Positions 26,467 through 54,185 of a stretch of DNA of 64,000 bases are shown here, one piece after another. The stretch covers positions 186,001-250,000 of the forward strand of contig JAWMAR010000478.1 of the NCBI GenBank assembly GCA_036785375.1, written 5' to 3'. The notes beneath the pieces were generated by a model that saw nothing but the letters and a program-made list of their open reading frames with translations, had not been told where the DNA came from and made no database searches. This DNA comes from Leucoraja ocellata (lineage: Eukaryota). The stretch's first letter is position 1. Every line of letters begins with the position of its first letter. A program made the translations under genes and the position numbers.

Positions 26467-26658
26467 CTACCCCTTCCCCTGCTTGGACTGGAACCAGAGC
26501 TCCGCGTATTCCACCCCCTCGCCACTGTGCCCGGTCTCTCCGCTGCTCAGCACCTCCTGCATGTTGGCGTACACGACCGCTTGCTCTTCCCCCTCTCCTG
26601 ATTCCCCTCCTTCTTTCCGCTCCACTGGGGCCGGCCCGTTCTCTCCACTCCCCGCGCT
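26467..26658 (-). CDS. Siglec-like gene A: terminal coding exon with VVYANM and VEYAEL tyrosine motifs and stop
   Basis: ctttccttccag|AGC GCG GGG ... GTC GTG TAC GCC AAC ATG ... GTG GAA TAC GCG GAG CTC ... GGG TAG, 192 nt. VEYAEL fits the ITIM consensus (I/V/L/S)xYxx(L/V). Confidence 0.85.
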   Translation of the reverse strand, partial: SAGSGENGPAPVERKEGGESGEGEEQAVVYANMQEVLSSGETGHSGEGVEYAELWFQSKQGKG

Positions 26659-27943
26659 CTGGAAGGAAAGGGAAGCAGACGGGCAGTTATGGGTTTAGTA
26701 CAGAGCAGTGTGGCCCGGCATTTAATACCATCAGTGAGAAGGTTCACAACTCCTGAACTCCCACAGAACCTGGTTCAGCCATGTTGTTGATGTTCTCCTC
26801 TCACACACTCTCGCTCTCCTTCTCTCTCCCCCTCTCTCACTTTCTCTCCCTCTCCCTCTCCTCTCACTTGCAGTTTCACACTTTCTCTCTCCCCCTTTCT
26901 CCCTCTCCTCTTTCTCTCACTCGCTCACACTCAGGCACCGTGTCTCTCACACTCGCAGTTTCACCCACTCTCTCTCTCTCCCTCTCTCGCCCCGTCTCCC
27001 CCTCTCTCCAACTTTCTCTCTCTCTCACACCCACTCTCACACCCACACACTCTCACATAGTTAGATAAATCAATATTCATACCCCCGGTTGCTAAATACT
27101 TTAATTCCCCTTCCCACACTGACCTTTCTGTCCTCGGTCGCCTCCATTGACAGAGTGAGGCTAAACACAAATTGGAGGGCCAGCATCACATATTCCGTTT
27201 GGGCAGCTTACAGCCCAGTGATATGAACATTGATTTCCCTCAGTTGAGGTAGCCCTGTGTTCCCTCTCTCTCCATCCCTCCCCCACCCAAGTCGCACCAG
27301 TTTCTCGTTTTCACCCAACAAACCACTAACCTGTTTCCTTTATCATCGTTACTTTGTTTACATCTATCTTTCATTCATTGTTCTTTATCTCTCTCTACAT
27401 CATCATCTATATAGAGTCATTCATTGTGGAAACAGGCCCTTCTGCCCAACTTGCCCACACCGGCCAACATGGCCCAGCTACACTAGTCCCACCTGCCTGC
27501 GCTTGGTCCATGTACCTTTCTAACTGTTTCTTAAACATTGGGATAGTCCCAGCCTCAACTACCTCCTCCAGCAGCTCGTTCCATACACGCACCACCCTTT
27601 GTGTCAAAAAGTTACCCCTCAGATTTTTTCCCCTTCACCTTGAACCCATGTCCTCTGGTCCTCGATTCCCCTACTCTGGGCAAGAGACTCTGTGCATCTA
27701 ACCGATCTATTCCTCTCATGATTTTATACACCTCTATAAGATCACCCCTCATCCCCCTGCGCTCCAAGGAATAGAGTCCCAGCCTCCTCAACCTCTCCCT
27801 GTGGCTCAGGCCCCTCAAGTCTCGACCGAAATATCACCTGTTCCTTCTCTCCAGAGATTCTGCCTGTTTCACTGAGTTACTCCAGCTTTTTGTACCCACG
27901 TTTGTATCATCTGTATTTGAGATTAAATACAAAGTTCCACTAC

Positions 27944-28010
27944 CTGATTGGTGGCAGATTGTGGGCAGTAGATCACATTGGTGTCTTGGTTTCCTGAAGC
28001 ATCTTCCCTC
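27944..28010 (-). CDS. Siglec-like gene A: cytoplasmic exon 1 (REDASGNQDTNVIYCPQSATNQ)
   Basis: 67 nt, gttgctgcag|G...CAG|gtagtg, phase 2 to 0. It bridges the TM and terminal exons exactly in frame. Confidence 0.8.
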
Positions 28011-28934
28011 CTGCAGCAACAGAAGATCACACCAAGTTTACAGCACATCAGTAAAGTCCAAGTACAAAGTTGCAGTTGTATTAGACGTTGGTCATAAAGT
28101 CATGAGGTCATTAATGATAGGAGCAGAATGAAGTCATTCGGCCCATCAAGTCTACTCTGCCATTCAATCATGGCTGATCTAACTCTTCCTCCTAATCCCA
28201 TTCTCCTGCCTTTCTCCCCATAACCCCTGACACCCGTACTGATCAATAACCTATCTATCTCTGCCTTAAACATATTGATTGGCTTGGCCTCCACAGCCTT
28301 CTGTGGCAAAGAATTACACAGATTCACCACTCTATGACTGAAGAAACTCCTACTCTGCTTCCTAAAGGTAGTCCTTTAATTCTAAGGCTGTGGCCTCTGG
28401 TCCTAAACTCACTCTCCCACTAGTGGAAACATCCTCTCCACATCCATTCTATCCAGGCCATTCACTATTCATTAAATATCAATGAGGTTCCCCCCTCATC
28501 CTTCTAAACTCCAGCTAGTACAGGCCCAGTAAGTGTCAAACACTCATCATATGTTAATCATTCTCGTAAACATCCTTTGGACCCTCTCCCGAGCCAGCAC
28601 ATTCTCCTTCAGATATGGGGCCCAAAACGGCTCACAACAGTCTAAAGACCATCTGTTGCTGGCTCTGATTTGGTCTAACTTTCTCAACCTTTCAGTCTGA
28701 AGAAGGTCCCGACCCGAAATGTCACCTATTCCTGAATCCCCAGATATGCTGCCTGACCTGCTGAGTTACTCCAGCACTTTGTACCTGTCCATGTTCTCCA
28801 GAGATGCTGCCTGACCCGCTGAGTTACTCCAGCACTTTGTGTCTGTGAACAGGAGTTAGCCTGGCAGAAGCAGTCATAAGCAGATGACAAAGAGATGGAT
28901 TTGGAAGTAAAAATGTGGATTTATTTAAACTTAC

Positions 28935-29031
28935 CGCAGTATATACTTGTAGATGATGAATCCAGCTAGCACAGCCATCAGTATTATCCCTGCTGTAAGC
29001 AAAACTGGCTTCCAAATACCGAAGCTTTTAT
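28935..29031 (-). CDS. Siglec-like gene A: transmembrane exon (DKSFGIWKPVLLTAGIILMAVLAGFIIYKYILR)
   Basis: 97 nt, tttttacag|AT...CG|gtaagt, phase 1 to 2. It contains a 19-residue uncharged span followed by basic residues, and is in frame with the 35764 exon. Confidence 0.88.
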
Positions 29032-32000
29032 CTGTAAAAACAAGAGGTGTGTTTTCAGTTTAATTTATTGTCTGGTGTAACGAGGTACAGTGAAAAGCTT
29101 TTGTGTCGTGCTATCCAGTCAGCGGAAAGGCAATACATGATTACAATCGAGCCGTCCACAGTGTACAGTTACAGGACAAAGGGAATAACGTTTAGTGCAA
29201 GGTAAAGCCAGCAAAGTCCGATCAAAGATAGTCCGAGGGTCACCAATGAGGTAGATAGTAGTTCAGGACTGCTCCCTAATTGTGGTAGAATGGCCTAATA
29301 ACACCTGGGAAGAAACTGTCCCTGAATCTGGAGATGTGCGTTTTCACGCCAGTTCCCTTATCATGTATCTAAATACTGTAAACAGCTTGATTGTAATCGT
29401 GTATGGTCTGTACACTGACTGGTTAGCACACAACAAAAGATTTTCACTGTGGCTGGGTAAACATGACAATAAACTAAACTGTAACGTAGTCTTATAGTAG
29501 AGTATAAATCATGAGAGGATTAGATCGGGTAGATGCACAGAGTCTCTTGCCCAGAGTAGGGGAATCGAACATCAGAAAACATAGGTTTAAGGTGAGGGGG
29601 AAAAGATTTAATACAAATCTAAGGGGAAACTTTTCCACACAGTGGGTGGTGGGTGTATGGATTGTGCTGCCAGAGGCCGTTGAGGCAGAGACTATCCCAA
29701 CATTTACAAAACAGTTATACAGGTACATGGATAGGACTGGTTTGCAGGGATATGAACCAAGCACAGGCAGGTGGGACTAGTGTCACTGGGGCATGTTGGC
29801 TGGTGTGGACAAGTTGGGCCAAAGGACCTGTTTCCACAATGTATCACTATAACTCTGTGAGAGGATGTTCACACGGATATGGGCCTGTTTTCATGCGATG
29901 TCACTATGACTCAATGATATCTTGCCTGCCGCAGATGTTAGTTTGTAGTTGTTGTGCAAGACATTGGTGAGACCGCATTTGAGGTATTGCGTCCAGTTTT
30001 AGTCACACTGCTCTAGGAAGGAAGCTGGAAAGAGTGCAGAGAAGATTCAAGACAATAGACAATAGGTGCAGGAGTAGGCCATTCGGCCCTTCGAGCCAGC
30101 ACCGCCATTCAATGTGATCATGGCTGATCATCCACATTCAGTACCCCGTTCCTGTCTTCTCACCATATCCCTTGACTCCGCTATCTTTAAGAGCGCTATC
30201 TAACTGTCTCTTGAAAGCATCCATTGAATTGGCCTCCACTGCTTTCTGAGGCAGAGAATTCCACAGATTCACAATTCTCTGGGTAAAAACGTTTCTCCTC
30301 ATCTCCGTTTTAAATGTCCCACCCCTTATTCTTAAACTGTGGCCCCTGGTTCTGAACTCCCCCAACATCGGGAACATGTTTCCTGCCCCTAGTGTCCAAT
30401 CCCTTCACAATCTTACATGTTTCAATAAGATTCCCTCTCATCTTTCTAAATGCCAGAGTATACAAGCCCAGCCCCTCCATTCTATCAAGATATGACAGTC
30501 CCGCTATCCCGGGAATTAACCTTGTGAACCTACGCTGCACTCCCTCAATAGCAAGAATGTTCTTCCTCAAATATGGAGATCAAAACTGCACACAATACTG
30601 AAGACTGATCGGATACTTTCAAGAGAGCTAGATAGACCCCTTAAAGATAGTGGAGTCAAGGCATACGGTGAAAAAGCAGGAACGGGTGTCTGAATGTGGA
30701 TGATCAGCCCTGATCAAATTGAATGGCGGTGCTGGCTCCAAGGGCCAAATGGCCTACTCTGCTCCCATTGTCTATTGTCAAAGTACCCGTTCAACTCGTC
30801 TGCCATTTCCTTGTTCCCCATAATAAATTCACCTGTTGTCGTCTTCAAGATTCCAACTTCGGTCTGAACTAATTTTTTCCTCTTCACATACCTAAAGAAG
30901 CTTTTACTATCCTCCTTTATATTCTTGGCTGGCTTACCTTCGTACCTCATCTTTTATACCCCGCATCACCTTCTTAGTTATCTTCTGTTGCTCTTTAAAA
31001 GTTACCCAATCCTGTGGCTTCCCACTCATCTTGCAATGTTATACTTCTCTTTAATTTTATACTGTCCTTGACTTCCCTTGTCAGCCACGGTCGCCCCTTA
31101 CTCCCCTTGGAATCTTTCTCCCTCTTTGGAATGAACTGACCCTGCACCTTCTGTATTATTCCCAGATATACCTGCCATTGTTGTTCCAATGTCATCCCTG
31201 CCAGGGAATTTTTCCAGTCAACTTTGGCCAGCTCCTCCCTCATGGCTCCATAGTCCCCTTTGTTCAACTGTAATATTGACATTTCTGATTTTCCCTTCTC
31301 CCTCTCAAATTGTAGATTACAACATATTAATCGTCGACTAGGTGCAGCTTGTCGTAGACATTGTGTTGTCTTTGGGCCGCCAGGAAATTGTGTTCCCCCC
31401 CATGTATTAAAAGTGATTTCCGCCCTTGAGAAGAGGGAGTGGCCGGGGTGAGACTGGCCCTTGATAATGCTGCTGGCCTTGTCGAGGCAGCGTGAGGTGT
31501 AGATGGAGTCGTTGGTAGGGAGGTTGGATTGTGCGATGGTCTGGGATGTGTCCACAACTTTATGCAATTTTTTACGGTTAGCACACAACTAAAGCTTTTC
31601 ACTGTACCTCGGTACACGGGACAATAGGCTAAACTGTACTAAACAAACCACAGATGTACCTTGAACCATCCCACCACAACCAGAGAGCAGTGCTGAACTA
31701 CTATCTACCTTATTGGTGACCCTCGGTCTATCCTTGATCGGACTTTACTGCATTTACCTTGCACTAAACATTATTCCCTTATCATATATGTAAACACTGT
31801 AAACAGCTTGATTGTAATCATGTATTGTCTGTACACTGACTGGTTAGCACACAACAAAAGCTTTTCACCGTAGCTCGGCGCACACATGACAATAAACTAA
31901 ACTGTAACGTAGTCTTATAGTAGTGTATAAATCATGAGAGGATTAGATCGGGTAGATGCGCAGAGTCTCTTGCCCAGAGTAGGGGAATCGAACATCAGAA

Positions 32001-32329
32001 AACATAGGTTTGAGGTGAGGGGAAAAAGGTTTAATAGGAATCTAATGGGTAACTTTTTCACACAGATGGGTGTATGGACTCAGCTGCCAGAGGCCGTTGA
32101 GGCAGAGACTATCCCAACATTTACAAAACAGTTATACAGGTACATGGATAGGACTGGTTTGCAGGGATATGGACCAAGCACAGGCAGGTGGGACTAGTGT
32201 AGCTGGGGCATGTTTGCTGGTGTGGACAAGTTGGGCCGAAGGGCCTGTTTCCACAATGTATCACTATAACTCTGTGAGAGGATGTTTAGACGGATATGGG
32301 CCTGTTTTCATTCGATGTCACTATGACTC

Positions 32330-35175: not shown

Positions 35176-35324
35176 GTTGCCATCACTCGAGAATTTGGCA
35201 GGAACACGATGAGGTCAGGTTTGCAGGGGTATGGGCCAAATGCAGGCAGGTGGGACTGGTGTAGGTGTGACATGTTGGTTGGTGTGGGCAAGTTGAGCTG
35301 AAGGGCCTGTTTCCACACGGTATG

Positions 35325-35654: not shown

Positions 35655-35763
35655 TACCTGTGTAGTAATGGCAATGGAAAGTTGGACATTGTAAAAGTTA
35701 GAGATGGCCATTACAGTATGACTCTCTGGCTCTCTGACTTCCCTCGCCCATAAATGTCCTCAC

Positions 35764-36048
35764 CTTCCGTCCACAGATACAGCGTGAACATGGCTTCCCC
35801 GTGCCGGTTTCGGACTGAGCACACGTTCTCCCCTCCCTCACCCCATCTCAGAGTGAGGGAGCCATTCACCAGATGCCCGCTTGCCACCTGCCAGATGTGG
35901 AGACGTCCGTGGGTTTGATTTCCGCTGAGGTTGGCGAGGGGGAGGTGACGGGTGAGCTCTCCGGGTGGGTTGCACCTGGCCGCACACACACAGGTGACAC
36001 TCTCAGGTGTGTGAGTGCATCCCGAATCTCGGGAAATCTTTGGCGCAT
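35764..36048 (-). CDS. Siglec-like gene A: membrane-proximal Ig domain 4 (MAG domain-5 type)
   Basis: 285-nt phase 1-1 exon (cctccag|ATGCGCC...GAAG|gtgagg): YAPKISRDSGCTHTPESVTCVCAARCNPPG...VNGSLTL...VCSVRNRHG. The SxC...CxC...NP pattern resembles the last Ig domain of MAG. The acceptor has a short pyrimidine tract. Confidence 0.8.
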
Positions 36049-38474: not shown

Positions 38475-38756
38475 ATTCTACAGTGAGGGTCACATCCCTC
38501 TCTGCTGTCCCGTGTTCATTCACCGCCACACACTGATAGACCCCAGCGTCCTGCCATGCCAGCTGAGGGAACTGCATCCACAGCTCGTTGCTGGAACATG
38601 TTGTGTTCAGAGTGACACCGAGATGTACCCACGTCAGGTTAGATGCTGGGAAACTCTGGACGGAGCAGAGGATCGCTGCAAAGTTTCCTTCCTTTACAAT
38701 CACCCGGGAACTGTTCGCATCATCGTGGGAAGTGATTGAGAGATTTTGTGGAGCAT
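38475..38756 (-). CDS. Siglec-like gene A: intact C2-set Ig domain 3
   Basis: 282-nt phase 1-1 exon (ttgtctctag|ATGCTCC...GAAT|gtgagt): YAPQNLSIT...KEGNFAAILCSVQSFPASNLTW...DAGVYQCVAVNEHG. Confidence 0.9.
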
Positions 38757-41126: not shown

Positions 41127-41272
41127 CTTTGTGTGCGTGCGTGTGTGTGAGAGCGAGTGCGAGTGCGAGTGAGAGTGAAAGTGAGAGTGTGTGTGTTAGT
41201 GAATTCCAGCATCTCTCATGGGCCAATAAACCATCTGTCTTTACATAGACATGACAGTGTGTTTCTACACAC

Positions 41273-41372
41273 ATTCTACAGTGAGGGTCACATCCCTCTC
41301 TGCTGTCCCATGGTCATTCTCCACTACACACTGATAGACCCCAGCATCCTTCCCTGTCAGCTGAGGGAATTG
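41273..41372 (-). pseudogene. Second copy of the 3' half of the dead C2 exon
   Basis: Near-identical to 47794-47893, with the same flanks and the same adjacent LINE junction. It has no 5' half. Confidence 0.85.
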
Positions 41373-41424
41373 TAAAGAATAGGCTTGTATTCACTGATGT
41401 TTAGAAGGATGAGGGGATGTCTTA

Positions 41425-44400
41425 ACCATATAACCATATAACAATTACAACACGGAAACAGGCCATCTCGGCCCTACAAGTCCATGCCGAACAAAATTTT
41501 TTTCCCCTTAGTCCCACCTGCCTGCACTCGTACCGTAACCCTCCATTCCCTTCTCATCCATATGCCTATTCAATTTATTTTTAAATGATACCAATGAACC
41601 TGCCTCCACCACTTCCACTGGGAGCTCATTCCACACCGCCACCACTCTCTGCGTAAAGAAGTTCCCCTCATATTACCCCTAAACTTCTGTCCCTTAATTC
41701 TGAAGTCATGTCCTCTTGTTTGAATCTTCCCTATTCTCAAAGGGAAAAGCTTGTCCACATCAACTCTGTCTATCCCTCTCATCATTTTAAAGACCTCTAT
41801 CAGGTCCCCCCTTAACCTTCTGCGCTCCAGAGAATAAAGACCTAACTTATTCAACCTATCTCTGTAACTTAGTTGTTGAAACCCAGGCAACATTCTAGTA
41901 AATCTCCTCTGTACTCTCTATTTTGTTGACATCCTTCCTATAATTTGGCGACCAAAATTGTACCCCATACTCCAGATTTGGTCTCACCAATGCCTTGTAC
42001 AATTTTAACATTACATCCCAGCTTCTATACTCAATGCTCTGATTTATAAAGGCTAGCATACCAAAAGCTTTCTTTACCACCCTATCTATATGAGATTCCA
42101 CCTTCAAGGAACTATGCACGGTTATACCCAGATCCCTCTGTCCAACTGTATTCTTCAATTCCCTACAATTTACCATGTACGTCCTATTTTGATTTGTCCT
42201 GCCAAGGTGTAGCACCTCACATTTATCAGCATTAAACTCCATCTGCCATCTTTCAGCCCATTTTTCCAAATGGCCTAAATCACTCTGTAGACTTTGGAAA
42301 TCCTCTTCATTATCCACAACACCCCCTATCTTGGTATCATCTGCATACTTACTAATCCAATTTACCACACCTTCATCCAGATCATTGATGTACATGACAA
42401 ACAACAAAGGACCCAACACAGATCCCTGAGGCACCCCACTAGTCACCTGCCTCCAACCCGATAAACAGCCATCCACCATTACCCTCTGGCTTCTCCCATT
42501 CAGCCACTGTTGAATCCATCTTGCTATTCCTGCATTTATACCCAACAGTTGAACCTTCTTAACCAACCTTCCATGAGGAACCTTGTCAAAGGCCTTACTA
42601 AAGTCCATATAGACAACATCCACTGCTTTACCCTCGTCAATTTCCCTAGTAACCTCTTCAAAAAATTCAAGAAGATTAGTCAAACATGACCTTCCAGGCA
42701 CAAATCCATGTTGACTGTTCCTAATCAGACCCTGTTTATCTAGATGCTTATATATATTGTCTCTAAGTATCTTTTCCATTAATTTGCCCACCACTGAAGT
42801 CAAACTAACAGGTCTATAATTGCTAGGTTTACTCTTAGAACCCTTTTTAAACAATGGAACAACATGCGCAGTACGCCAATCCTCGGGGACTATTCCCGTT
42901 TCTAATGACATTTGAAATATTTCTGTCATATCCCCGGCTATTTCTACACCAACTTCCTTCAATGACCTAGGGAATATCCTGTCAGGACCTGGAGACTTAT
43001 CCACTTTTATATTTTTCAAAAGTGTCAGTAATTCTTTTACTTTGAACCTCATAGTATCCATAGCTACTCTACTAGTTTCCCTTCCCTCACATAATTCAAT
43101 ATCCTTCTCCTTGGTGAATACCGAAGAAAAAAAATTGTTCAATATCTCCCCCATCTCTTTTGGCTCTGCAGATAGCTGTCCACTCTGTCTCTCCAATGGA
43201 CCAATTTTATCCCTCGTTATCCTTTTGCTATTAATATAGCTGTAGAAACACTTTGGATTGACTTTCACCTTACTTGCCAAAGCAACCTCATATCTTCTTT
43301 TAGCTTTTCTAATTTCTTTCTTAAGATTCTTTTTACATTCCTTATACTCCTCAAGCACCTCATTTACTTCATGCTGCCTATAATTATTGTAGATCTCCCT
43401 CTTTTTCCGAACAAGATGTCCAATTTCCCTTGAAAACCAGGGCTCTTTCCAATTTTTACTGTTTCCTTTCAACCGAACAGGAACATAAAGATTCTGTACT
43501 CTTAAAATTTCCCCTTTAAATGTCCTCCATTTCTCTTCTACATCTTTCCCATAAAACAAAATGTCCCAGTTCACTCCTTTTAAATCATCTCGCATCGCAT
43601 CAAAGTTAGCCTTTCTCCAATCAAAAATCTCAACCCTAGGTCCAGTTCTGACCCTCTCCATAATTATCTTGAAACTAATGGCATTGTGATCACTGGACCC
43701 GAAGTGCTCCCCAACGCATACCTCCGCCACCTGTCCCATCTCATTTCCTAACAGGAGGTCCAGCACTGCCCCTCCTCTAGTAGGTACCTCTATGTATTGC
43801 TGCAAAAAACTATCCTGCACACATTTTACAAACTCCACCCCATCCAGCCCATTTACAGAATGTGTTTACCAGTCTATGTGTGGAAAGTTGAAATCTCCCA
43901 CAATCACTACCTTGTGCTTACTACTAATATCTGCTACCTCCTTACATATTTGCTCTTCCAATTCTCGTTCCCCGTTTGGCGGTCTATAATACACCCCTAT
44001 AAGAGTTGCTACACCTTTCCCACTTCTCAATTCCATCCAAATAGCCTCCCTAGATGAGCCCTCCAATCTATCCTGCCAAAGCACTGCTGTGATATCTTCC
44101 CTGACTAGCAATGCAACACCTCCACCTCTTGCCCCTCCAATTCTATCACACCTGCAGCAGCGAAATCCTGGAATATTTAGTTTCCAATCACAGCCCTCCT
44201 GCAACCACGTTTCACTGATCGCCACAACATCATACTTCCAGGTGTCTATCCAGACTCTAAGCTCATCAACCTTTCTTACAATGCTCCTAGCATTAAAATA
44301 TGCACATTTAAGAAAACCCCTGTCACTTATTCTCTGTTTATTTCCTTTTTTTTCTTTCTCCTCTTGTGTCCGAGTGCTTCCCATTTCTGCTTCCTGCCTC

Positions 44401-45686
44401 CCATTCTGTCTACTACCTTTCGCTATTTGAGTCCCTCGCCCCAACCATTCTAGTTTAAAGTCTCCCCAGCTGCCTTTGCAAATTTCCCCACTAGGATATT
44501 GGTCCCCCTCGGGTTCAAGTGCAACCCATCCTTTCTGTACAGGTCCCACCTTCCCCAAAAGAAGTCCCAATGATCCAGGAACTTGAATCCCTGCCCTCTG
44601 CACCAGTCTTTCAGCCACGCATTTATCCTCCACCTCGCTCCATTCCTACTCTCACTGTCGCATGGCACAGGCAGTAATCCTGATATGGTTACCTTTTTGG
44701 TCCTTTTTCTTAACTCTCCTCCCAACTCCCTAAATCCTCCCTTCAGGACCTCTTCCCTTTTTTTTCCTATGTCATTGGTACCTATATGTACCACGACCTC
44801 AGGCTCCTCTCCCTCTGATTTAAGGATATCTTGGATGCGTTGAGACACGTCCGAGACCTTGGCACCAGGGAGGCAGACCACCATCCTGGTCTCCCGACTG
44901 CGTCCACAGAATCGCCTATCCGACCCCCTAACAATAGAGTCCCCAATTACTATGGCCCTCTTTTTTTCCCTAGCTTTTGGAGCAACAGGGCCGGTCTCTG
45001 TGCTGGAGGCCCGTCCGCTGTCACTACCCCCGGGTAGGCTGTCACCCCCATCCGTACTCAAACAGGAGTACTTATTTGCGAGGTGTACCGACATTGGAGT
45101 ACTCACTCGTTCCTGCCTCTGCCCCTTGCCCTTCCTTAACGTGACCCACATGTCTCTCTCCCATGGTTTTGGAGTGACCACCTCTCTATAACTCCCCTCT
45201 ATGACCTCCTCACTCTCCCTGATCAGAGCGAGGTCATCTAGCTGCTGCTCCAGGATCCTAATACGGTCCCTTAGGAGCCCCATCTCGCTGCACCTGGTGC
45301 AGAAGTGGATGTCTGGAGGGCCATCCGACACCATGACCTCCCACATCTGACATCCAGAATAGTATACTGCTCTGAATGTCATTCTCCCGCCTTACCCTGG
45401 ATCTGATACCAGTATAATACAATAGAAACTGCTGGGAGAAATCAGCAGGTATCTGACTCACAACAGCTGCTCCCTCGTGACCTTTAAACTGCACCTTTAT
45501 TATATAAACAAAAAGCACTGTACCTTTAGCCCACTGTACCCTTGGCTCACTGTACCTTTACTAAAGAACTGCACCTTTAACCCACTGTACCTTAACTAAA
45601 GCACTGCCCCTTTAACCAGAAAGCACAAATGCTAACCTGATGTTGCACCCAATCAGCTGCTTCCTCTAGTCTGCTTCCACCAATCA
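41425..45686 (-). mobile_element. Near-full-length CR1-clade LINE: ORF1 esterase, ORF2 APE endonuclease-RT
   Basis: ORF1 at 44450-45382 has the SGNH motif IVIGDSIVR and VVHIGTND. ORF2 has AISETWL, VGDFN, YRPVSLTS, GVPQGSVLGP and YADD. The 3' tail is (TTATATGG)n, and a GTCTTA TSD sits at 41419-41424 and 45687-45692. Confidence 0.95.
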
Positions 45687-47793
45687 GTCTTATTGAAACA
45701 TATAAAATTATAAAAGAACTGGACAAGGTAGATGCACGAATGTTCCCAATGTTGGGTGAGACCAGAACCAGGGGCTATAGTCTTAGAATAAAGGGGAAGC
45801 CATTTAAGGCTGAGGTAAGAAAAAACGTTTTCACCCAGAGAGTTGTGAATTTGTGGAATTTCCTACATCCATCTGCGCTCCAAGGAATAGAGACCCAGCC
45901 TGCACAACCTCTCCCTGTAGCTCGGGCCCTCTAGTCCTTGGCAACATTCTCATAAATCTTCTCTGAACCCTTTCAAGCTTGATAATATCTTTCCTGTAAC
46001 ATGGAGCCCAGAACGGAACAAAATATTCTAAATGCGGTCTCACCGACATCTTATACAACTGCAACATGACCTCCCAACTTCTATACTCAATACACTGACT
46101 GATGAAGGCCAGTATGCCAAAAGGCTTTTTGACCACCTGTGACTTGATCTTCAAGGAACCTTGCACCTGCACTCCTTGATCCCTCTGCTCTACAACACTC
46201 CCCACAGGCCTACCATTAACTGTGTTGGTGCTGCTTTTGTTAGACGTCCCAAAATGCAACATCTCACATTTCTCTGATTTAAATTCAATTAACCAATCAT
46301 CAGCTCATCTGGCCAATGATCAAGTTCCTGCTGCAATCTTTCACAACATTGCAGTTCTGCCACACCCCCTCTCACTGCTCCCCCTCTGTGATGCCTCCTG
46401 ATCTCCGATCTTACATTCATTGTTCTTTATCTCTCTACATAGAAACATAGAAAATAGGTGCAGGAGGAGGCCATTCGGCCCTTCAAGCCAGTACCACCAT
46501 TCATCGTGATCATGGCTGATCGTCCCCAATCAATAACCCGTGCCTGCCTTCTCCCCATATCCCTTGACTCCACTAACCCCTAGAGCTCTATCTAACTCTC
46601 TCTTAAATCCATCCAGTGATTTGGCCTCCACTGCGCTCTGTGGCAGGGAATTCCACAAATTCACAACTCTCTGGGTGAAAAAGTTATTTCTCATCTCAGT
46701 CTTAAATGGCCTCCACTTTATTCTAAGACTGTGGCCCCTGGTTCTGGACTCGCCCAACATTGGGAACAATTTTCCTGCATCTAGCTTGTCCAGTCCTTTT
46801 ATAAGGAATGAGCTGCCGGAGGAGGTAGTTGAGGCTGGGACCATTGCAACATTTAAAAAACAGTTGGACTGTTTACATGGATAGGAGGTAGACAAAAGTG
46901 CTGGAGAAACTGAGCGGGTGCAGCAGCATATATGAAGCGAAGGAAATAGGCAATGTTTCGGGCCAAAACCCTTCTTCAGACTGATGGACGTCAAATATGG
47001 ATAGGACTTGTTTGGAGGGATATGGGCCGAAGTAGGGCAGGTGGGCAGAGTATAGATGGGGCTTGTTGTCCGGGGTGAGCAAGTTGGTACCATGCTGTAA
47101 GACTCTATGACTCTAAAGACACTGCCTGACCCACTGAGTTGCTCCACTACGTTGTGTTTAAGTAACGTGAGGAGTGACGATACATAGAGGGGGGCATTGA
47201 AGGTTTCTGGGTGGAAAGACCAATATAATCCAACAACGTCAGGCAGAGGTGAGACAGGCTACATACAGGTGGGGAACAAACAAGGCTGTAGATGTGGGCG
47301 GCACGGTGGCGCAGTGGGTAGAGTCACGGCGCCAGAGACCCGGGTTCAATCCTGACCACCGGTGCCTTTCTGTACGGAGTTTGCACGTTCTCCCCGTGTC
47401 CTGCGTGGGTTTTCTCCGAGATCTTGGGGATGTGTGTCTGTATGTGTGTTTGAGTGAATGAGTGCGTGTGTGTGTGAGAGAGAGAGAGAGAGGGGATAGA
47501 GGGAGCTAGAGACCGCGTGTGTGTGTGGCGATTGTGAGAGAATGTGTGTGTGTTTGAGTGAGTGTGTATGTATGAACGACAGAGTGTGTGTGTGTGAGGG
47601 ATGATGTTCATGTGTGGGACAGAGAGAATGTGTGTGTTTGTGCGAAAGAGAGAGGGAGACTGCATGTGTGAGTGCATGTGTGAGTGAGTGTGTGTGTGAG
47701 AGTGTGTGTGTTTGTGTTAGTGAATTCCAGCATCTCTCATGGGCCAATAAACCATCTGCCTATACATAGACATGACAGTGTGTGTCTACACAC

Positions 47794-48502
47794 ATTCTAC
47801 AGTGAGGGTCACATCCCTCTCTGGTGTCCCATGTTCATTCTCTGCCACACACTGATAGACCCCAGCATCCTTCCCTGTCGGTTGAGGGAATTGAAAAGAC
47901 TAGGCTTGTATTCACTGGAGTTTAGAAGGATGAGGGGATATTTTATAGAAACATATAAAATCGTAAAAGGACTGGACAAGGTAGATGTACGAAAAATGTT
48001 CCCAATGTTGGGCGAGTCCAGAACCAGGACTATAGTCTTCGAATAAAGGGAAAGCAACTTAAGGCTGAGGTGAGAAAAAACTTTTCCACCCAGAGAGTTG
48101 TGAATTTGTGGAATTCCCTGCCACAGAGGGAAGTGGAGGCCAAGTTACTCGATGGATTTAAGAGAGAGTTAGATAGAGCTCTAGGGGCTAGTGGAGTCAA
48201 GGAATATGGGGGAGAAGACAGGCACGGGTTATTGATTGGGGACAATCAGCCATGATCACAATGAATGGTGGTGCTGGCTCGAAGGGCCGAATGGCCACCT
48301 CCTGCACCTATTTTCTATGTCTATGTCTATGTCCATCCACAGCTCGTTGTGTGTTCAGCGTGACACTGATGTCTCCACGTCAGGTTAGACGCTGGGAAAC
48401 TCTGGAGGGAGCAGAGGATCGCTGCAGAGTTTCCTTCCTTTATACTGACCCAGGAATTGTTCACATTGTCGGGGGAAGTGATTGAGAGATTCTGGGGGGC
48501 GT
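47794..48502 (-). pseudogene. Dead C2-set exon (paralog of 38475-38756), split into 48334-48502 and 47794-47893 by a LINE 3' fragment
   Basis: The acceptor gtttgcag|ACGCCCCCCAGAATCTC is intact (YAPQNLSITSPDNVNNSWVSIKEGNSAAILCSLQSFPASNLTW). A 2-nt and an 11-nt deletion follow relative to the intact paralog, then a 440-bp LINE tail between ...TGGATG and CAATTCCCT.... The 3' half reads QFPQPTGKDAGVYQCVAENEHG, with donor gtgtgt instead of gtgagt. Confidence 0.85.
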
Positions 48503-49380
48503 CTGCAAACAGATAACATTCAGCAACCAGTTTTGCGGCTCTTTCGTTGATCCTTGTAAAAGACTTTAGTCTTCAGACTGTAGAGATCCACTGCGGAAAT
48601 AGGCACTTCAGCACACGGAGTCCGCGCCAACCATCGATCACATATTCACACACTAGTTCTATGTTTAGGGAAATGAGAGATATAGACGATGGTGTAGAGA
48701 CATATAGAACAAAGAATGAAAGATATGCAAAAAGTTAACGATGATAAAGGAAACAGGCCGTTGTTAGCTGTTTGTTGGGTGAGAACGAGAAGCTGATGAG
48801 ACTTGGGTGGGGGAGGGATGGAGAGAGAGGGAATGCCGGGGCTACCTGAAGTTAGAGAAATCAATATACATACCACTGGGCTGTAAACTGCCCAAGCAAA
48901 ATATGAGATGCTGATCCTCCAATTTGCATTTAACCTCACTCTGACAATGGTGGTGTCCGAGGACAGAAAGTTCAGTGAGGGAATGGGAAAGAGAATTAAT
49001 GTGTTTAGCAACCAGGAGATCAGGTAGGTCATACATCTCTCTACATCATCGTCTATATCTCTCGTTTCCCTTTCCAGTAACTTTCAGTCTGAAGAAGGTT
49101 CTCGATCTGAAACGTCACCCATTCCTTCTCTCCAGAGATGCTGCCTGTCCTGCTGAGTTTCTCCAGCTTTTGGTGTTGATTTGATTAGTACAGGTGTCAG
49201 AGGATATGGGGAGAAGGCAGAAGGGGTTAGGAGAGAGAGATTGTTCAGCCATAATTGAATGGCAGAGTAGACTTGATGGGCTGAATGGCCTAATTCTGTA
49301 CCTATCGTCTATGACCTTATATACCAGCACTGCTAATAGATTATTGATGTTCCTGCACAATAAACGATCTCCGTACTTAC

Positions 49381-49674
49381 ATTCCACAGTCAGTGTGAGG
49401 GTCTGCTCCAATGACACAGTTGGGTATGTGACTCTGCAGGTGAGGCTTTGTCCATGATGTTTGAGCGCTGGGGTCAGGGACAGAACAGAAGTATATGTCA
49501 GAGTGTCACCCTGCTGAGTTACGCTGTGTGAGGCTGACGGGGGTACATCAGCGGGGGTGACCCAGGTTAAGGTGGGTGCCGTTCCATTACACGTGGTGCT
49601 GAAGGAGCAGGTCATGTCCACAGGCTTTCCCGCCACCAATTCAGCAGGGAATATCGTGGGTTTATCCGTGAAAT
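49381..49674 (-). CDS. Siglec-like gene A: C2-set Ig domain 2
   Basis: 294-nt phase 1-1 exon (tgtgttag|ATTTC...GAAT|gtaagt): DFTDKPTIFPAELVAGKPVDMTCSFSTTCNGTAPTLTW...SVLSLTPALKHHGQSLTCRV. The extra Cys (TTC) matches the Siglec D1-D2 inter-domain disulfide pattern. Confidence 0.92.
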
Positions 49675-50130
49675 CTAACACACAGAGAAACAAATACTGT
49701 TAGTTAAATATCACTGGATACATCGGTTCACATTGAAATCCCAGTCCCACACGAGCAAGGATGTTTTTACAAGGTATAGAAGTGTGAAAACGCACACCTC
49801 CAGATTCAGGGACAGTTTCTTCCCAGCTGTTATCAGGCAACTGAATCATTCTACCACAACCAGGGAGCGGTCCTGAACTACTATCTGCCTCAGCAGAAAG
49901 ACTATACATGATTGCAATCGAGCCATTTGCAGTGTATGGATACGTGATAAGGGAATAACGTTTAATGCAAGGTAAAGCCAGCAAAGTCCAATCAAGGATA
50001 GTCCGATGGGTCACCAGTGATGTCGACAGTAGTTCAACACTGCTCTCTGGTTGTGGTAGGATGGTTCAGTTGCCTGATAACAGCTGGGAGAAACTGTTGA
50101 GTGAATGAGTGAATTAAACAGAGCACTTAC

Positions 50131-50493
50131 CACTAACAGTGAGCTTTGTTACAGGGTGGTAGTTGTACGTATTTTCCCCTCCGAAATCAACTCTGAAAAA
50201 ATAACGACCTTCATCTTGCGGCGTGATGTTGTCTATAACCAGGGAACAGTCGTTGTCTTTCAGGATTCCTGACAGCCGGGTCCGATGCTGAAACTTTGTT
50301 GATACTAGACTGGGATCCCCGGAGTGGAAGGCTACAGGATCTTTGTGCGATCCACTGTTATACCAGATTCCAGTCCGTGGTTGACTGTTCAGATTCGACG
50401 GGTACCAGTATTTACACGGAATCCGTGCACACAAACCATTCTGCGCTGTCACAGCTCTGGGATTCCACGCTCTCCACTCTCCCGACATCACGG
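50131..50493 (-). CDS. Siglec-like gene A: N-terminal V-set Ig domain
   Basis: 363-nt phase 1-1 exon (ctctcctcag|CCGTG...AGTG|gtaagt). It encodes GEWRAWNPRAVTAQNGLCARIPC...WY...DNDCSLVIDNITPQDEGRYFFRVDFGGENTYNY. It has the Siglec-type Cys pattern (CxxIPC, DCSL) and the F-strand YFFR Arg (codon 50192-50194). Confidence 0.93.
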
Positions 50494-50630
50494 CTGAGGA
50501 GAGAAGGAACAATCTTTAGCAGTGAACACCCTGTCAGTTCACTGGACTTTCCACACCGTTTATCCTGCGCTGTGGACCCGGTGTGAACAGAGCGTAGAAG
50601 AGCAGCATGGTGGCGTAGTGGTAGAGTCTT

Positions 50631-51192
50631 CCTCCTCACCGCCCCTCCCCCAGTGCATCACTCCCTCCTCACCGCCCCTCCCCCAGTGCATCACTCCCTC
50701 CTCACGGCCCCTCCCCCAGTGCATCACTCCCTCCTCACCGCCCCTCCCCCAGTGCATCACTCCCTCCTCACCGCCCCTCCCCCAGTGCATCACCGCCTCC
50801 TCACCGCCCCTCCCCCAGTGCATCACTCCCTCCTCACCGCCCCTCCCCCAGTGCATCACTCCCTCCGCACCGCCCCTCCCCCAGTGCATCACTCCCTCCT
50901 CACCGCCCCTCCCCCAGTGCATCACCGCCTCCTCACCACCCCTCCCCCAATGCATCACTCCCTCCTCACCGCCCCTCCCCCAGTGCATCACTCCCTCCTC
51001 ACCGCCCCTCCCCCAGTGCATCAATCCCTCCTCACCGCCCCTCCCCCAATGCATCACTCCCTCCTCACCGCCCCTCCCCCAGTGCATCACTCCCTCCTCA
51101 CCACCCCTCCCCCAATGCATCACTCCCTCCTCACCGCCCCTCCCCCAGTGCATCACTGCCTCCGCACCGCCCCTCTCCCAGTGCATCACTCC
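50631..51192. repeat. 33-bp minisatellite, 17 units (CCTCCTCACCGCCCCTCCCCCAGTGCATCACTC)
   Basis: Directly visible tandem array with few variant units. Confidence 0.97.
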
Positions 51193-51225
51193 CCGTAAAC
51201 ACTTCTGAGTTGCTGCTGATGGTAC

Positions 51226-51265
51226 CTTGGAGAAGGGAGAGGAGGAAGAACGATTTCCCGATCAT
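51226..51265 (-). CDS. Siglec-like gene A: signal-peptide coding exon (MIGKSFFLLSLLQ+G); the full exon with 5'UTR is 51226-51307
   Basis: Minus strand reads ctttctcttccag|ACCGGG...ACA ATG ATC GGG AAA TCG TTC TTC CTC CTC TCC CTT CTC CAA G|gtacca. The phase-1 join to the V-set exon gives the hydrophobic leader MIGKSFFLLSLLQAVMS-GEW. Confidence 0.8.
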
Positions 51266-52489
51266 TGTCCGATCCCAGATATCCCGTCAGATACCCGATC
51301 TCCCGGTCTGGAAGAGAAAGTTATTGCAGTAAAACTCCAGCGACCAATATACATTAAGCAACATGGATGCAATGCTGAGGCTCTATGAGGAGCTGGTGAG
51401 GCCACATTTGGAATATTGTGAGGAATTTTGAGCCCCGCATCTGATGAAGGATGTGCTGGCTCTGGAGAGGGTCCAGAGGTGGTTTACAGGAATGGTCCCA
51501 GTAATTAGTGTGTTTACATATGAGAGTGTTTGTCTGCACTGGGTCTGTACTAGCTGGAGTTTAGAAGAATGAGGGAGGACCGCATTGAAACTTACCGAAT
51601 AGTGAAAGGCTTGGCTCGAGTGGATGTGGAAAGGACTTTTCCACTACTGGGAGGGTCATAGCCTCAGAATTCAACGTTCTTCTAGGAAGGAGATGAGGAG
51701 GAATTTCTTTAGTGAGAGGGTGGTGAATCTGTGGAATTCTTTGCCACAGAAGGCTGTGGCAGCCCAGTCAGTGGATATTGTTGAGGCAGAGAAAGATAGA
51801 TTGTGAATTTGTCCGGGTGTCACGGGTTATAGGGAGAAGGCAGGAGAATGGGATTAGTAGGGAGAGATGGATCAGCCATGATTAAAAGGCGGAGTAGATT
51901 TGATGGGCTGAATGGCCTAATTCTGCTCCTATCACATGTCTGTAAATATCACCAACAGCATACGCTGCACCAACTACATTGAAGCTGTGGTCAATAAAGC
52001 AACTGATGTCTCATCTTGCTCAAAAGATGAAGGAAGTTCAGCATTTCTCCAGTGACTCACACCAACTTCTCCACATGAACTGTGAAAGAACACTGTTAGG
52101 TTGCGTTACGCTTTGGTTTGGGACCAGCTCTGCCCAAGACCACAAGAAATTGCTCAGCTTAGTTTAGTTTAGAGATACAGCACAGAAACAGGCTCCCACG
52201 GCCCACAGACCATGCCAACCACTTCACACACTAGTTCTATGTTTACTTTTTGAGATACAACACGGAAACTGGACCTTTACCCCACCGTGCCCGCATCAAC
52301 CAGCGATCACCCGTTCACACACTAGTTCTGTGTTTAGTCTAGAGATACAACATGAAAACAGGCCCTTCGACCCATCGAGTCTGTGCCGACCAGCGATCTC
52401 CCGCACACTAACACTATCCTACACACGCTAGGGACAATTTACAATGTTGCCAAGCCAATTAGCCTACAAACCTGCACGTCATTGGAATG

Positions 52490-52992
52490 AAGGGGGAAGG
52501 GGTGTGTGGGGAGGGGGTTTGTGGGGTTGCATGACTAGGGGGTGTCGTGTGGGTAGGGGAGGGAGTGTGTGTGAGTGTGGGGGTGTGTGGGGGGGGGGGG
52601 TGTGGGGGATGAGGGTGGGGGGTGAGGGTGGGGGGTGAGTGTGGGGGGTGAGTGCGGTGGGGAAGGGGTGTGGGGAAGGGGGGGTGTGTGGGAGTGTTGG
52701 GGCGGGGAAGGGTGTGTGTGGTGTGTGGTGGAGGGAGTTGGGGAAGGTGGGGTGGGGAGGGGGGGTGTAGGGGAGGGGAGGTGTAGGGGAGGGGGGCTGT
52801 AGGGGAGGGGGGTGTGGGGGAGGGGGAGTGTGGGAGGGGGAGTGTTTGAGTGCGGTCAACAGCCCACACTCTGCTGCTTCAGCTTTATTCTCGGCAGCTT
52901 CTGGACGGGCGACATCTGAACCGTTTTTGAGCAAATTTAAAAACAACACAGAGGGGAAGTGGTCAAGATGAGAGTTTTAGTAATAGTGTAGA
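52490..52992 (-). mobile_element. Second, 3'-truncated copy of a related Helitron
   Basis: The reverse complement begins TCTACACTATTACTAAAACTCTCATCTTG...TTGTTTTTAAATTTG, matching the 5' end at 33581. A similar CCCCACA low-complexity tract follows. Confidence 0.7.
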
Positions 52993-54024
52993 CAGAAGAT
53001 AGATTGTATCAGGATGCATCGCAGCTTGCTTTGGGAACAGCTCCATCCAACATCGCAACAGGTCCTTCGGCCCACCATGTCCATGCCAGCCCTTTTTTCA
53101 GCCCATCTATTGGTCTGATTGTATAATTGCCACGTGTACCAGAATTCAGTGTTTGCATGCAACCCAGGCTGGTCGTACTGTATAAGGTCATAAGAGATAG
53201 GAGCAGAATTAAGCCATTCGGCCCATCAAGTCTGCTCCACCATTCAACCATGGCCGATATATCTCTATCTCCTAACCCCATTCTCCTGCCTTCTCCCCAT
53301 AACCTCTGACACCAGTACAAATCAAGAATCTATCCGTCTCAGCCTTAAATAATCCACTGACAGCCTCTACAGTCTACTGTGGCAAAGAATTCCACAGATT
53401 CACCACCCTCTGACTGAAGATGTCCTTCCTCATCTCCTTCCTAAAAGAACATCCTTTAATTCTGAGGCTGTAATCTCTAGTCCTAGACTCTCCCACTAGT
53501 GGAAACATCCTCTCCACGTTCACTCTATCCAAGCCATTCATTATTCTGTCTGCCCCCCCCCCCCCCCCCCCTCCCCCCCTCGCCCCTCATTCTTCTAAAC
53601 TCCAGCTAGTACAGGCCCAGTGCTATCAAACACTCGTCATATGTTAACCCACTCATTCCTGGGATCATTCATGTAAACCTCCTCTGGACCCTCTCCAGAG
53701 CCAGCACATCCTTCCTCAGATATGGGGCCCAAAATTGCTCACAATATTGAGTACAATATATAGTGAGAGTCATGGGAGAGGGAGACACAGAAATACCTTT
53801 CTGTCCTGGGCCACCTTCACGGTTAGAGTCAGGCCCAACGCAAATTGGGGAACAGCACCTCATATTACGCTTGGGCAGCTTACATCGGTACGATTATCGA
53901 CTTCTCTAACTTCGTAGCCTTGCTTTCCCTCTGTCTCCATCCCTCCTCTTTCCTATTCTACAACCAGTCTGACCGTCCCCTTGACGGTCTTGTGGGAACG
54001 AGCGACAGACACGGAATTACGTAC

Positions 54025-54185
54025 CTGGGTTCTGTCCGCTGGTCGAGTATCGACTGACAAACACTCAGGGAGCCAGTGTCCTGATCCTCAGCGGCCGTCA
54101 CTGTGTGGAGAACACAAATGTGTAGAGGGGTAGATTAGCATCTGGAAATGGAAGTAAAATAAGGAAGTATTCTTTTATCAGCAAA
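54025..54185 (-). promoter_or_regulatory. Candidate non-coding first exon and TATA-less promoter of gene A
   Basis: The signal exon has a splice acceptor, so an upstream exon is required. This non-repeat island ends in the strong donor CCCAG|gtacgt (54025). It carries ETS cores GGAAGT (54150-54155, 54163-54168) and a GATA site TTATCA (54175-54180). Confidence 0.5.

What the first reader, a model, noticed from the sequence alone, without database searches (positions are those of the whole stretch)
26467..54185. Complete hidden Siglec gene: MAG-like ectodomain joined to a CD33-like double tyrosine-motif tail
Seen in sequence: eight exons with canonical AG/GT ends and consistent phases sum to 40+363+294+282+285+97+67+192 = 1620 nt, giving an open 539-aa protein. 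The signal, TM and terminal exons are not shown in the correct frame by the ORF track. Established knowledge: the V-set YFFR Arg, the CxxIPC/DCSL cysteines and the extra D2 Cys are Siglec hallmarks. GEWRAWNP resembles the MAG N-terminus, and the last domain resembles MAG domain 5. Two C-terminal tyrosine motifs are typical of inhibitory CD33-related Siglecs, not MAG. Inference: a lineage-specific inhibitory sialic-acid receptor in a cartilaginous fish, informative about the common origin of MAG and CD33-related Siglecs.
Basis: partly seen in the sequence, partly recalled or inferred. Interest (0 to 1): 0.85.

Follow-up and report, generated by a model that had tools for sequence, protein, structure and literature searches.

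The report
Siglec receptor gene in a skate-like genome
This is a real eight-exon gene for a sialic-acid-binding immune-type receptor, one ordinary member of a large family that sharks and rays carry and that annotation pipelines already name MAG-like or Siglec-like.

Summary
The eight-exon model holds. On the minus strand, exons of 40, 363, 294, 282, 285, 97, 67 and 192 nt all have AG/GT ends and compatible phases, and each is open in its frame. They sum to 1620 nt, or 539 codons plus a stop. The first exon lies at 51226-51265, not 54185. By rule I did not build or search the joined protein.

The V-set exon matches MAG structures best (E 1.4e-23) and keeps the sialic-acid arginine. The last Ig exon matches MAG domain 5.

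The "MAG head on a CD33 tail" reading is not supported. Gecko, frog and paddlefish MAG carry the same two C-terminal tyrosine motifs at the same spacing, so the tail is shared ancestry.

The gene nests (100/99 support) in a multi-copy elasmobranch Siglec family. Of 120 listed relatives, 103 are elasmobranch, from 21 species, all auto-named. Single-domain trees cannot say whether the family is closer to MAG or to CD33-related Siglecs.

Stranded RNA reads cover exon 1, V and D2, but no exon joints were displayed. All D2 reads differ from the window at four sites in D2.

The scan's own notes report many Siglec genes elsewhere in this genome.

The parts
51226..51265 (-). Exon 1: start codon and most of the signal peptide (MIGKSFFLLSLLQ plus 1 nt), 40 nt, donor GTACCA
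   Evidence: One search lists it as one of 200 ATG...GT candidates. Its peptide matches the N-termini of Rhinoraja P0257, Pristis P0012 and Pristis P0010. RNA depth is 9.5 in bin 51172-51295 of run X24, and 16 of 16 reads span 51255.
50631..51193 (.). 33-bp minisatellite, 17.1 copies, inside intron 1
   Evidence: RNA depth is 0 in bins 50676-51047 and at most 0.34 in 51048-51171.
50131..50493 (-). Exon 2: V-set sialic-acid-binding domain, 363 nt, phase 1/1
   Evidence: Pfam V-set E 2.4e-11. PDB matches: MAG 1.4e-23, sialoadhesin 1.5e-18, CD33 1.4e-13. The arginine in YFFR aligns with the arginine at chain position 101 of MAG 5lf5.
49381..49674 (-). Exon 3: C2-set domain 2 with three cysteines, 294 nt, phase 1/1
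   Evidence: Pfam C2-set_2 E 9.5e-10. PDB matches: CD33 domain 2 at 3.6e-7, MAG at 1.5e-5.
47794..48502 (-). Broken D3-like exon. The 5' half is 48369-48502, with an intact acceptor and 13 nt of deletions. A repeat element of about 475 bp sits at 47894-48368. The 3' half is 47794-47893.
   Evidence: Stranded RNA reads lie on both halves.
41274..41375 (-). Second remnant of a D3-like exon (3' half only). It lies in a 1.65-kb direct duplication (39419-41063 and 45862-47490) next to a LINE at about 41.4-45.4 kb.
38475..38756 (-). Exon 4: I-set/C2 domain 3, 282 nt, phase 1/1
   Evidence: Pfam I-set E 3.3e-10. It matches MAG domains 3 and 4, whole-sequence E 7.2e-16.
35764..36048 (-). Exon 5: membrane-proximal Ig domain 4, 285 nt, phase 1/1
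   Evidence: No Pfam hit. The only significant PDB match is MAG residues 395-480 of chain 5lf5, E 1.9e-6. It is 81% identical by BLAST, or 84% over 94 aligned columns, to the same domain of Amblyraja P0267.
28935..29031 (-). Exon 6: transmembrane segment with no charged residue in its core, 97 nt, phase 1/2
   Evidence: it is the only hydrophobic one of 16 candidates. It matches the TM segment of relatives.
27944..28010 (-). Exon 7: juxtamembrane piece, 67 nt, phase 2/0. An in-frame alternative lies at 27941-28007.
   Evidence: It is homologous to the same stretch of Amblyraja P0267 and Rhinoraja P0257, which is 5 residues longer there.
26467..26658 (-). Exon 8: cytoplasmic tail with VVYANM and VEYAEL, plus the stop codon, 192 nt
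   Evidence: It is 78% identical to the tail of Amblyraja P0267. Motif scan.
25497..29786 (.). Right arm of an inverted duplication. It is 96.7% identical over 4311 bp to 1527-5828 and carries exons 6-8.
1527..5828 (+). Left arm of the inverted duplication. It holds the tail exons of a paralogous gene on the plus strand: TM 2294-2390, small exon 3312-3378, last exon 4671-4862.
   Evidence: 348 of 356 exon bases are identical and the splice dinucleotides are kept.

Best explanation
This is a protein-coding Siglec gene on the minus strand, spanning 26467-51265. It encodes a type I membrane protein with these parts:
- a signal peptide
- a V-set domain that keeps the sialic-acid arginine
- three further Ig domains
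- an uncharged transmembrane helix
- a cytoplasmic tail with one consensus ITIM (VEYAEL) and one near-ITIM (VVYANM)

It is one paralogue of a multi-copy, fast-evolving Siglec family found across sharks and rays.

Inferred mechanism: the V-set domain binds sialylated glycans. After tyrosine phosphorylation, the tail recruits SH2 phosphatases and dampens signalling in the cell that carries the receptor.

Shown here: the exon structure, domain identities, family membership and transcription of the 5' exons.

Inferred only: sialic-acid binding, inhibitory signalling and the cell type.
For: - Exon structure and phases.
- Domain identities.
- The arginine, the WxxW tryptophan, and the residues equivalent to N125 and Y127 align with MAG (residue list from PMC7226832 passages).
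- Relatives with the same layout and the same tail exist: Rhinoraja P0257 (552 aa) and Amblyraja P0267 (507 aa).
- The family clade has 100/99 support in the V tree and 97/97 in the D2 tree.
- 103 of 120 listed hits to P0017 are elasmobranch.
- Stranded RNA reads in run X24 cover exon 1, V and D2 at depth 6-19. The first mate lies on the plus strand, which fits a minus-strand RNA. Depth is 0 to about 1 in bins 50552-51171 of intron 1.
- The tail motifs are conserved in relatives.
Against: - No exon-exon joint was displayed. Only 15 of 257 joints were shown, and all of those were repeat-derived.
- No reads were laid on D3, D4, TM or the tail.
- All RNA reads covering D2 differ from the window at 49454, 49541, 49545 and 49631. 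They may therefore come from another individual, a sister species or a near-identical paralogue.
- Reads also cover both halves of the broken D3-like exon, so the sampled transcripts may carry a fifth Ig exon that this allele cannot encode.
- Run X17 showed no reads on the exons.
- The proximal motif is not a consensus ITIM.
- Y65 and T128 of the MAG binding site are replaced (S and N).
- All 8 base differences between the two tail copies change an amino acid.
Confidence: 0.7

Rival explanations
1. It is the orthologue of myelin-associated glycoprotein (MAG, Siglec-4) and works as a glial adhesion molecule, not as an immune receptor.
For: - MAG is the best solved-structure match for V, D3 and D4.
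- The tail layout equals that of non-mammalian MAG.
- No separate, well-conserved MAG orthologue of elasmobranchs turned up. The best elasmobranch hits to gecko or paddlefish MAG are 29-31% identical and are family members.
- An exclusive family+MAG clade is not rejected (p 0.088 for V; p 0.35 for D2).
Against: - It is multi-copy. A paralogue lies tail to tail in the same window, and relatives have many copies per genome.
- It has four intact Ig domains, not five.
- Bony-vertebrate MAGs are at least 40% identical to each other, but at most 31% identical to any elasmobranch protein collected.
- In the V tree the family sits beside tetrapod CD33-related Siglecs, not beside MAG, though weakly (88/76).
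Confidence: 0.1
2. In this assembly the gene is a decaying copy. The intact-looking 539-codon frame exists, but transcripts still splice in the broken D3-like exon, or the copy is silent, so no working receptor is made.
For: - The broken D3-like exon keeps its acceptor and donor.
- It carries stranded RNA reads at depths like the neighbouring exons.
- No read matches the window at four D2 sites.
- All 8 of 8 differences between the duplicated tail exons are non-synonymous.
- The locus is riddled with LINE and SINE insertions.
Against: - All eight exons are open with good splice sites.
- The hallmark residues are kept.
- Eight of eight non-synonymous changes is not significant (roughly 0.1 by chance, my estimate).
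- The reads may come from an animal whose allele lacks the insertion.
Confidence: 0.15
3. V-D2 and the downstream exons belong to different transcription units. The tail in the inverted duplication would then not be joined to this ectodomain.
For: - There are 10.6 kb of repeat-filled intron between D2 and D3, and 6.7 kb between D4 and TM.
- The tail lies in a duplicated arm.
- No joint evidence was obtained.
Against: - Order, strand and phases are all consistent.
- No other V exon, TM exon or stop-bearing exon of the family lies between them.
- Relatives P0257, P0267 and P0017 have exactly this order of domains in one protein.
Confidence: 0.05

Closest known systems
Elasmobranch Siglec family, auto-annotated as 'myelin-associated glycoprotein-like' or 'sialic acid-binding Ig-like lectin N' (for example Amblyraja XP_032870539 = P0007, Amblyraja P0267, Rhinoraja P0257)
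   Same: Per-domain identities to the best relatives are V 73%, D2 82%, D3 85%, D4 81% and tail 78%. The signal peptide, domain order, TM segment and two-tyrosine tail are the same. The clade support is 100/99.
   Different: No listed protein is identical or near-identical. The best match differs from exon to exon (P0007, P0257, P0265, P0267), so no clear one-to-one orthologue was found. The juxtamembrane exon is 5 residues shorter than in the skates. One Ig exon is broken.
Myelin-associated glycoprotein (Siglec-4), structures 5lf5 and 5lfr
   Same: MAG gives the best structural-database match for V (1.4e-23). The WxxW N-terminus, the arginine and the domain-5-like last Ig domain match. The two C-terminal tyrosine motifs are as in gecko, frog and paddlefish MAG.
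   Different: It has four rather than five intact Ig domains and is multi-copy. The bony-vertebrate MAG clade (98/90) lies outside the family clade. Y65 and T128 equivalents are changed.
CD33-related Siglecs of tetrapods (CD33, Siglec-5, -7, -8, -10)
   Same: The layout is V-set plus C2 domains, an uncharged TM and a proximal plus distal tyrosine motif. D2 matches CD33 best (3.6e-7). It sits in a clustered, rapidly duplicating gene family. A family+CD33r clade is not rejected (p 0.31).
   Different: The sister placement is weak (88/76). The proximal motif ends in M, not L/V/I. The distal motif is a consensus ITIM here, where many of the CD33-related and shark relatives carry T or S at that position (the naming of a T-x-Y-x-x-I/V motif as 'ITSM' is recalled).

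Membership tests
Siglec (I-type sialic-acid lectins) | N-terminal V-set Ig domain followed by C2-set domains | tested here: met
   Pfam V-set 2.4e-11, C2-set_2 9.5e-10, I-set 3.3e-10.
Siglec (I-type sialic-acid lectins) | Conserved arginine that binds the sialic-acid carboxylate (R118 of MAG) | tested here: met
   The R of YFFR aligns with R at chain position 101 of 5lf5, which is R118 when anchored on W22. Residue names are from PMC7226832 passages.
Siglec (I-type sialic-acid lectins) | Cysteine pattern for the intrasheet V-set disulfide and the V-D2 interdomain disulfide | tested here: met
   CxxIPC and DCSL in V align with MAG cysteines. Three cysteines in D2 align with CD33 domain 2. The bonds themselves cannot be tested here.
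Siglec (I-type sialic-acid lectins) | Binding of sialylated glycans | not testable with these tools
   This needs a glycan array with an arginine mutant as control.
MAG / Siglec-4 orthologue | Five Ig domains | tested here: not met
   There are four intact Ig exons plus remnants of a D3-like exon.
MAG / Siglec-4 orthologue | Groups with bony-vertebrate MAG in trees | tested here: inconclusive
   In the V tree MAG lies outside. AU p was 0.020 with a mis-set group and 0.088 when corrected. For D2 the corrected p is 0.35.
MAG / Siglec-4 orthologue | Single-copy gene in conserved synteny (next to CD22) | tested here: not met
   A paralogue lies tail to tail in the window. The window holds no other non-repeat gene. 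Synteny beyond 64 kb could not be tested.
MAG / Siglec-4 orthologue | Glial expression | not tested
   The tissues of the RNA runs are coded and unknown.
CD33-related Siglecs | Cytoplasmic membrane-proximal ITIM plus distal ITIM-like motif | tested here: inconclusive
   VEYAEL fits [ILVS]xYxx[ILV]. VVYANM does not, because of M at +3. Consensus is from PMC7226832.
CD33-related Siglecs | Phylogenetic grouping with tetrapod CD33-related Siglecs | tested here: inconclusive
   Sister placement has 88/76 support. A joint clade is not rejected, p 0.31. The D2 and D4 trees are polytomies.
Elasmobranch MAG-like/Siglec family | Nests inside the clade of shark and ray proteins for each domain | tested here: met
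   V 100/99. D2 97/97. D4 sits within an 84/92 group and is nearest to Amblyraja P0267.
Inhibitory (not DAP12-coupled) immunoreceptor | No charged residue in the transmembrane core | tested here: met
   The TM exon translation has a core with no K, R, D or E.

The most novel reading that the evidence does not exclude
The shark-and-ray family to which this gene belongs is the cartilaginous-fish counterpart of tetrapod CD33-related Siglecs. If so, clustered, fast-duplicating inhibitory Siglecs with a two-tyrosine tail already existed in the common ancestor of jawed vertebrates, and MAG is a neural offshoot of that ancestral immune receptor. This would qualify the published statement that fish genomes lack CD33-related Siglecs (PMC7226832), which rested on bony fishes.
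Probability: 0.3. Interest if true: 0.6.

Novelty: new member of a known kind. Interest (0 to 1): 0.35.

Why it matters
On its own the gene is one more paralogue of a family that annotation pipelines already find in at least 21 elasmobranch species.

The family as a whole is more interesting. I found no paper that describes it. A published view holds that fish have only Siglec-1, CD22, MAG and Siglec-15 and lack CD33-related Siglecs (PMC7226832).

The family combines MAG-like domains, a two-tyrosine tail shared with both MAG and CD33-related Siglecs, and cluster-style duplication. It could therefore help place the split between MAG and the CD33-related group.

The locus also shows, in one place, how such receptors change length through exon duplication, transposon hits and inverted gene duplication.

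Tried and rejected
54146-54185 has no ATG and no GT donor, so I rejected it.

**Alternative first exon.** 50578-50608 (MLLFYALFTP) resembles the start of the Amblyraja model P0007. In X24 its bin has depth 0.69, against 9.5 for the exon-1 bin. It is not favoured, but it is not excluded.

**Alternative 67-nt exon.** 27941-28007 keeps the frame. I prefer 27944-28010 for its CAG|GTA donor and first-AG acceptor. The choice is unresolved without RNA.

**Other length-matched candidates.** D2 49331-49624 and D4 35715-35999 were dropped for wrong phase and truncated domains.

**Read laying for splice joints.** Repeats in the stretch swamped the output. Only 15 of 257 joints were shown and none was exon to exon.

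**Run X1 as RNA.** Its contigs cross exon-intron borders at 49381 and 50493, so it behaves like DNA of a relative about 5% diverged.

**Mis-specified AU tests.** The V test forced in a long-branched teleost MAG (p 0.020). The first D2 test left out a row nested in the family (p 0.0029), and its second test did not finish. Both were replaced. The groups were named after I had seen the trees.

**Heptranchias P0115 as a conserved elasmobranch MAG.** Its shark relatives are only 41-44% identical, and no ray counterpart was listed, so I rejected this.

**Window-encoded protein in the database.** No row carried the '-' flag among the 120 listed or the 41. This is only weak evidence that the model is unannotated.

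**Not done:**
- structure prediction and fold search
- ESM Atlas search
- the third homologue search
- Rfam search
- the joined 539-aa protein, which was neither built nor searched, by rule

**Supplements.** I did not ask for any. Supplementary file 9 of PMC8455134 lists Ig-domain families of sharks and may mention Siglecs.

Full report
**What is there**

The region is repeat-rich. Its minus strand carries long open frames with Ig-domain features.

This gave:
- V 50131-50493
- D2 49381-49674
- D3 38475-38756
- D4 35764-36048
- a 97-nt exon at 28935-29031, the only hydrophobic one among 16 candidates
- a terminal 192-nt exon at 26467-26658, open in frame 0 and ending in TAG

54146-54185 has no ATG and is followed by CC.

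Among 200 ATG-to-GT candidates upstream of the V exon, 51226-51265 (40 nt) encodes MIGKSFFLLSLLQ. This is nearly the N-terminus of Rhinoraja P0257 and close to Pristis P0012 and P0010.

The 67-nt exon is 27944-28010. Its peptide is homologous to the juxtamembrane stretch of Amblyraja P0267 and Rhinoraja P0257, which is five residues longer there. An in-frame alternative lies 3 nt away at 27941-28007.

Splice contexts are ordinary. The weakest is the exon-1 donor, GTACCA.

The lengths sum to 1620 nt. Phases fit throughout. The six split junction codons, read from the end bases, are GCC, GAT, TAT, TAT, GAT and CGG, and the last junction falls between codons. I did not build or search the joined protein. 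All searches were exon by exon.

**What the parts are**

Pfam calls the exons V-set (2.4e-11), C2-set_2 (9.5e-10) and I-set (3.3e-10). The fourth Ig exon, the TM exon and the tail get no significant Pfam family.

Matches against solved structures:

| Exon | Best matches |
|---|---|
| V | MAG 1.4e-23, sialoadhesin 1.5e-18, CD33 1.4e-13 |
| D2 | CD33 3.6e-7, MAG 1.5e-5 |
| D3 | MAG domains 3 and 4, whole-sequence E 7.2e-16 |
| D4 | MAG domain 5 only, 1.9e-6 |

I compared the V exon with the MAG alignment. PMC7226832 (passages) names W22, Y65, R118, N125, Y127 and T128 as MAG residues, the last five as sialic-acid contacts.
- The arginine (R118), W22, N125 and Y127 are kept.
- Y65 is replaced by S.
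- T128 is replaced by N.

The TM core has no charged residue.

The tail has two tyrosines. VEYAEL fits the ITIM consensus. VVYANM does not, because of the M at +3.

**Relatives**

A full HMMER scan with the V exon found 1019 proteins at E up to 0.001, and 22 at E up to 1e-30. The best hits are ray and shark proteins. NCBI names them inconsistently: 'myelin-associated glycoprotein-like', 'sialic acid-binding Ig-like lectin 5/6/7/8/10/12/13/15', 'CD22-like' and 'hemicentin-like'.

With Mobula P0017 as query, 103 of the 120 listed hits are elasmobranch, from 21 species. No row was flagged as encoded by the window.

Best per-exon identities:

| Exon | Identity | Best match |
|---|---|---|
| V | 73% | Amblyraja P0007 |
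| D2 | 82% | Rhinoraja P0257 |
| D3 | 85% | Rhinoraja P0265 |
| D4 | 81% | Amblyraja P0267 |
| Tail | 78% | Amblyraja P0267 |

The nearest kin are skates, but there is no single clear orthologue.

**Trees**

- In a 46-row V-domain tree, the window sits in a family clade of 18 rows (100/99) and a skate subclade of 6 rows (99/94). The family is weakly sister (88/76) to tetrapod CD33-related Siglecs plus other shark 'MAG-like' proteins. Bony-vertebrate MAG (98/90) lies outside.
- The D2 tree (family 97/97) and the D4 tree are polytomies.
- In the AU tests, family+CD33r is not rejected (p 0.31).
- Family+MAG gave p 0.020 with a badly set group and p 0.088 when two long rows were left free.
- For D2, a flawed first test gave p 0.0029 and the corrected one gave p 0.35.

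The position of the family relative to MAG and to CD33-related Siglecs is therefore open.

I found no well-conserved elasmobranch MAG. Bony-vertebrate MAGs are at least 40% identical to each other, and the best elasmobranch proteins are 29-31% identical to them. The Heptranchias 629-aa candidate has shark relatives at only 41-44%. These searches were seeded from the family and rely on shared words, so a true MAG may have been missed.

**The tail is not a CD33 graft**

In the last 70 residues, gecko, frog and paddlefish MAG carry two tyrosine motifs at the same positions (39 and 62) as mole and lizard CD33-related Siglecs and as shark family members. In the window the two tyrosines are 21 residues apart, against 23 in those proteins. 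PMC7226832 says teleost MAG has an ITIM and regards it as ancestral.

**Expression**

No listed holder of the stretch is on record as RNA. I laid three raw-read RNA runs of 'organism B' and one contig run on 47700-51400.

- In X24, depth is 6-19 on V and D2 and 9.5 in the exon-1 bin. Depth is 0 in bins 50676-51047 and at most 0.34 in 51048-51171 of intron 1. It is 0.9 just upstream of exon 1, so the 5' end lies near 51.3 kb.
- In X24 the first mate lies on the plus strand, which fits a minus-strand RNA.
- X21 shows a little coverage, without that strand bias, and X17 shows none.

Results against my reading:
- No exon joint was among the 15 of 257 displayed.
- All reads covering D2 differ from the window at four sites in D2, and two more sites are mixed. 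The reads may come from another animal, a sister species or a close paralogue.
- Reads also lie on both halves of the broken D3-like exon.
- Run X1 crosses exon borders and looks like DNA.

**Surroundings**

- The tail exons lie in the right arm of a large inverted duplication: 1527-5828 against 25497-29786, 96.7% over 4311 bp. Further matching blocks run from 274 to 15335 against 31947 to 18591.
- The left arm carries the tail exons of a plus-strand paralogue with splice sites kept. 348 of 356 exon bases are identical, and all 8 differences change an amino acid.
- The 10.6-kb intron between D2 and D3 holds a D3-like exon. It is split by a repeat of about 475 bp and has 13 nt of deletions. The intron also holds a second 3' remnant in a 1.65-kb direct duplication, and a LINE.
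- Intron 1 holds a 33-bp minisatellite.
- The rest of the window holds only repeat-derived frames.
- Earlier notes of this scan describe the broken exon (s1-885651), the upstream paralogue (s1-885650) and many other Siglec-like loci in this genome. I used them as leads only.

**Literature**

For PMC7226832 I saw the listing, the start of the abstract and 12 passages. It states that fish regularly have Siglec-1, CD22, MAG and Siglec-15 and lack CD33-related Siglecs.

For PMC8455134 I saw one passage. It lists Siglecs among Ig families gained in jawed vertebrates.

The 2018 review and the 2004 fish MAG paper that PMC7226832 cites were not seen.

Four searches found no paper on an elasmobranch Siglec family. 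Subscription journals are outside the library.

**Verdict**

This is a real and correctly modelled Siglec gene. It is an ordinary member of a large, already auto-annotated elasmobranch family. The claimed chimeric nature is not supported. The family's position between MAG and CD33-related Siglecs is an open question of moderate interest.

Noticed in passing
window 274-15335 and 18591-31947: A large inverted duplication (palindrome) with arms 94-96.7% identical, centred near 16-17 kb. It places two Siglec paralogues tail to tail. The right arm has an extra low-GC LINE piece at about 24.4-25.5 kb.
   Followed up: partly
window 2294-2390, 3312-3378, 4671-4862 (+): These are the tail exons of the plus-strand paralogue. 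They differ from this gene's tail exons at 8 of 356 bases, and all 8 differences change an amino acid. Both tyrosine motifs are unchanged.
   Followed up: yes
window 47794-48502 and 41274-41375 (-): A D3-like Ig exon is split by a repeat of about 475 bp and has 13 nt of deletions, but both its splice sites are kept. A second 3' remnant lies in a 1.65-kb direct duplication beside a LINE. Stranded RNA reads lie on both halves of the split exon at depths like the real exons.
   Followed up: partly
window 50631-51193: A 33-bp minisatellite with 17.1 copies and 94% matches fills most of intron 1. It creates long artefactual ORFs on both strands.
   Followed up: yes
window 50578-50608 (-): A short ATG-to-GT stretch (MLLFYALFTP) just upstream of the V exon resembles the start of the Amblyraja gene model P0007. 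It may be an alternative first exon or a shared annotation artefact.
   Followed up: partly
window 41895-45382 (-): A LINE with a 647-aa reverse-transcriptase-type ORF and upstream ORFs of 255 and 310 aa sits inside the D2-D3 intron.
   Followed up: no
relatives P0001, P0002, P0014: Several shark, ray and frog models have three or four tandem V-set domains that each match this V exon. They are either true multi-V Siglecs or fused gene models.
   Followed up: no
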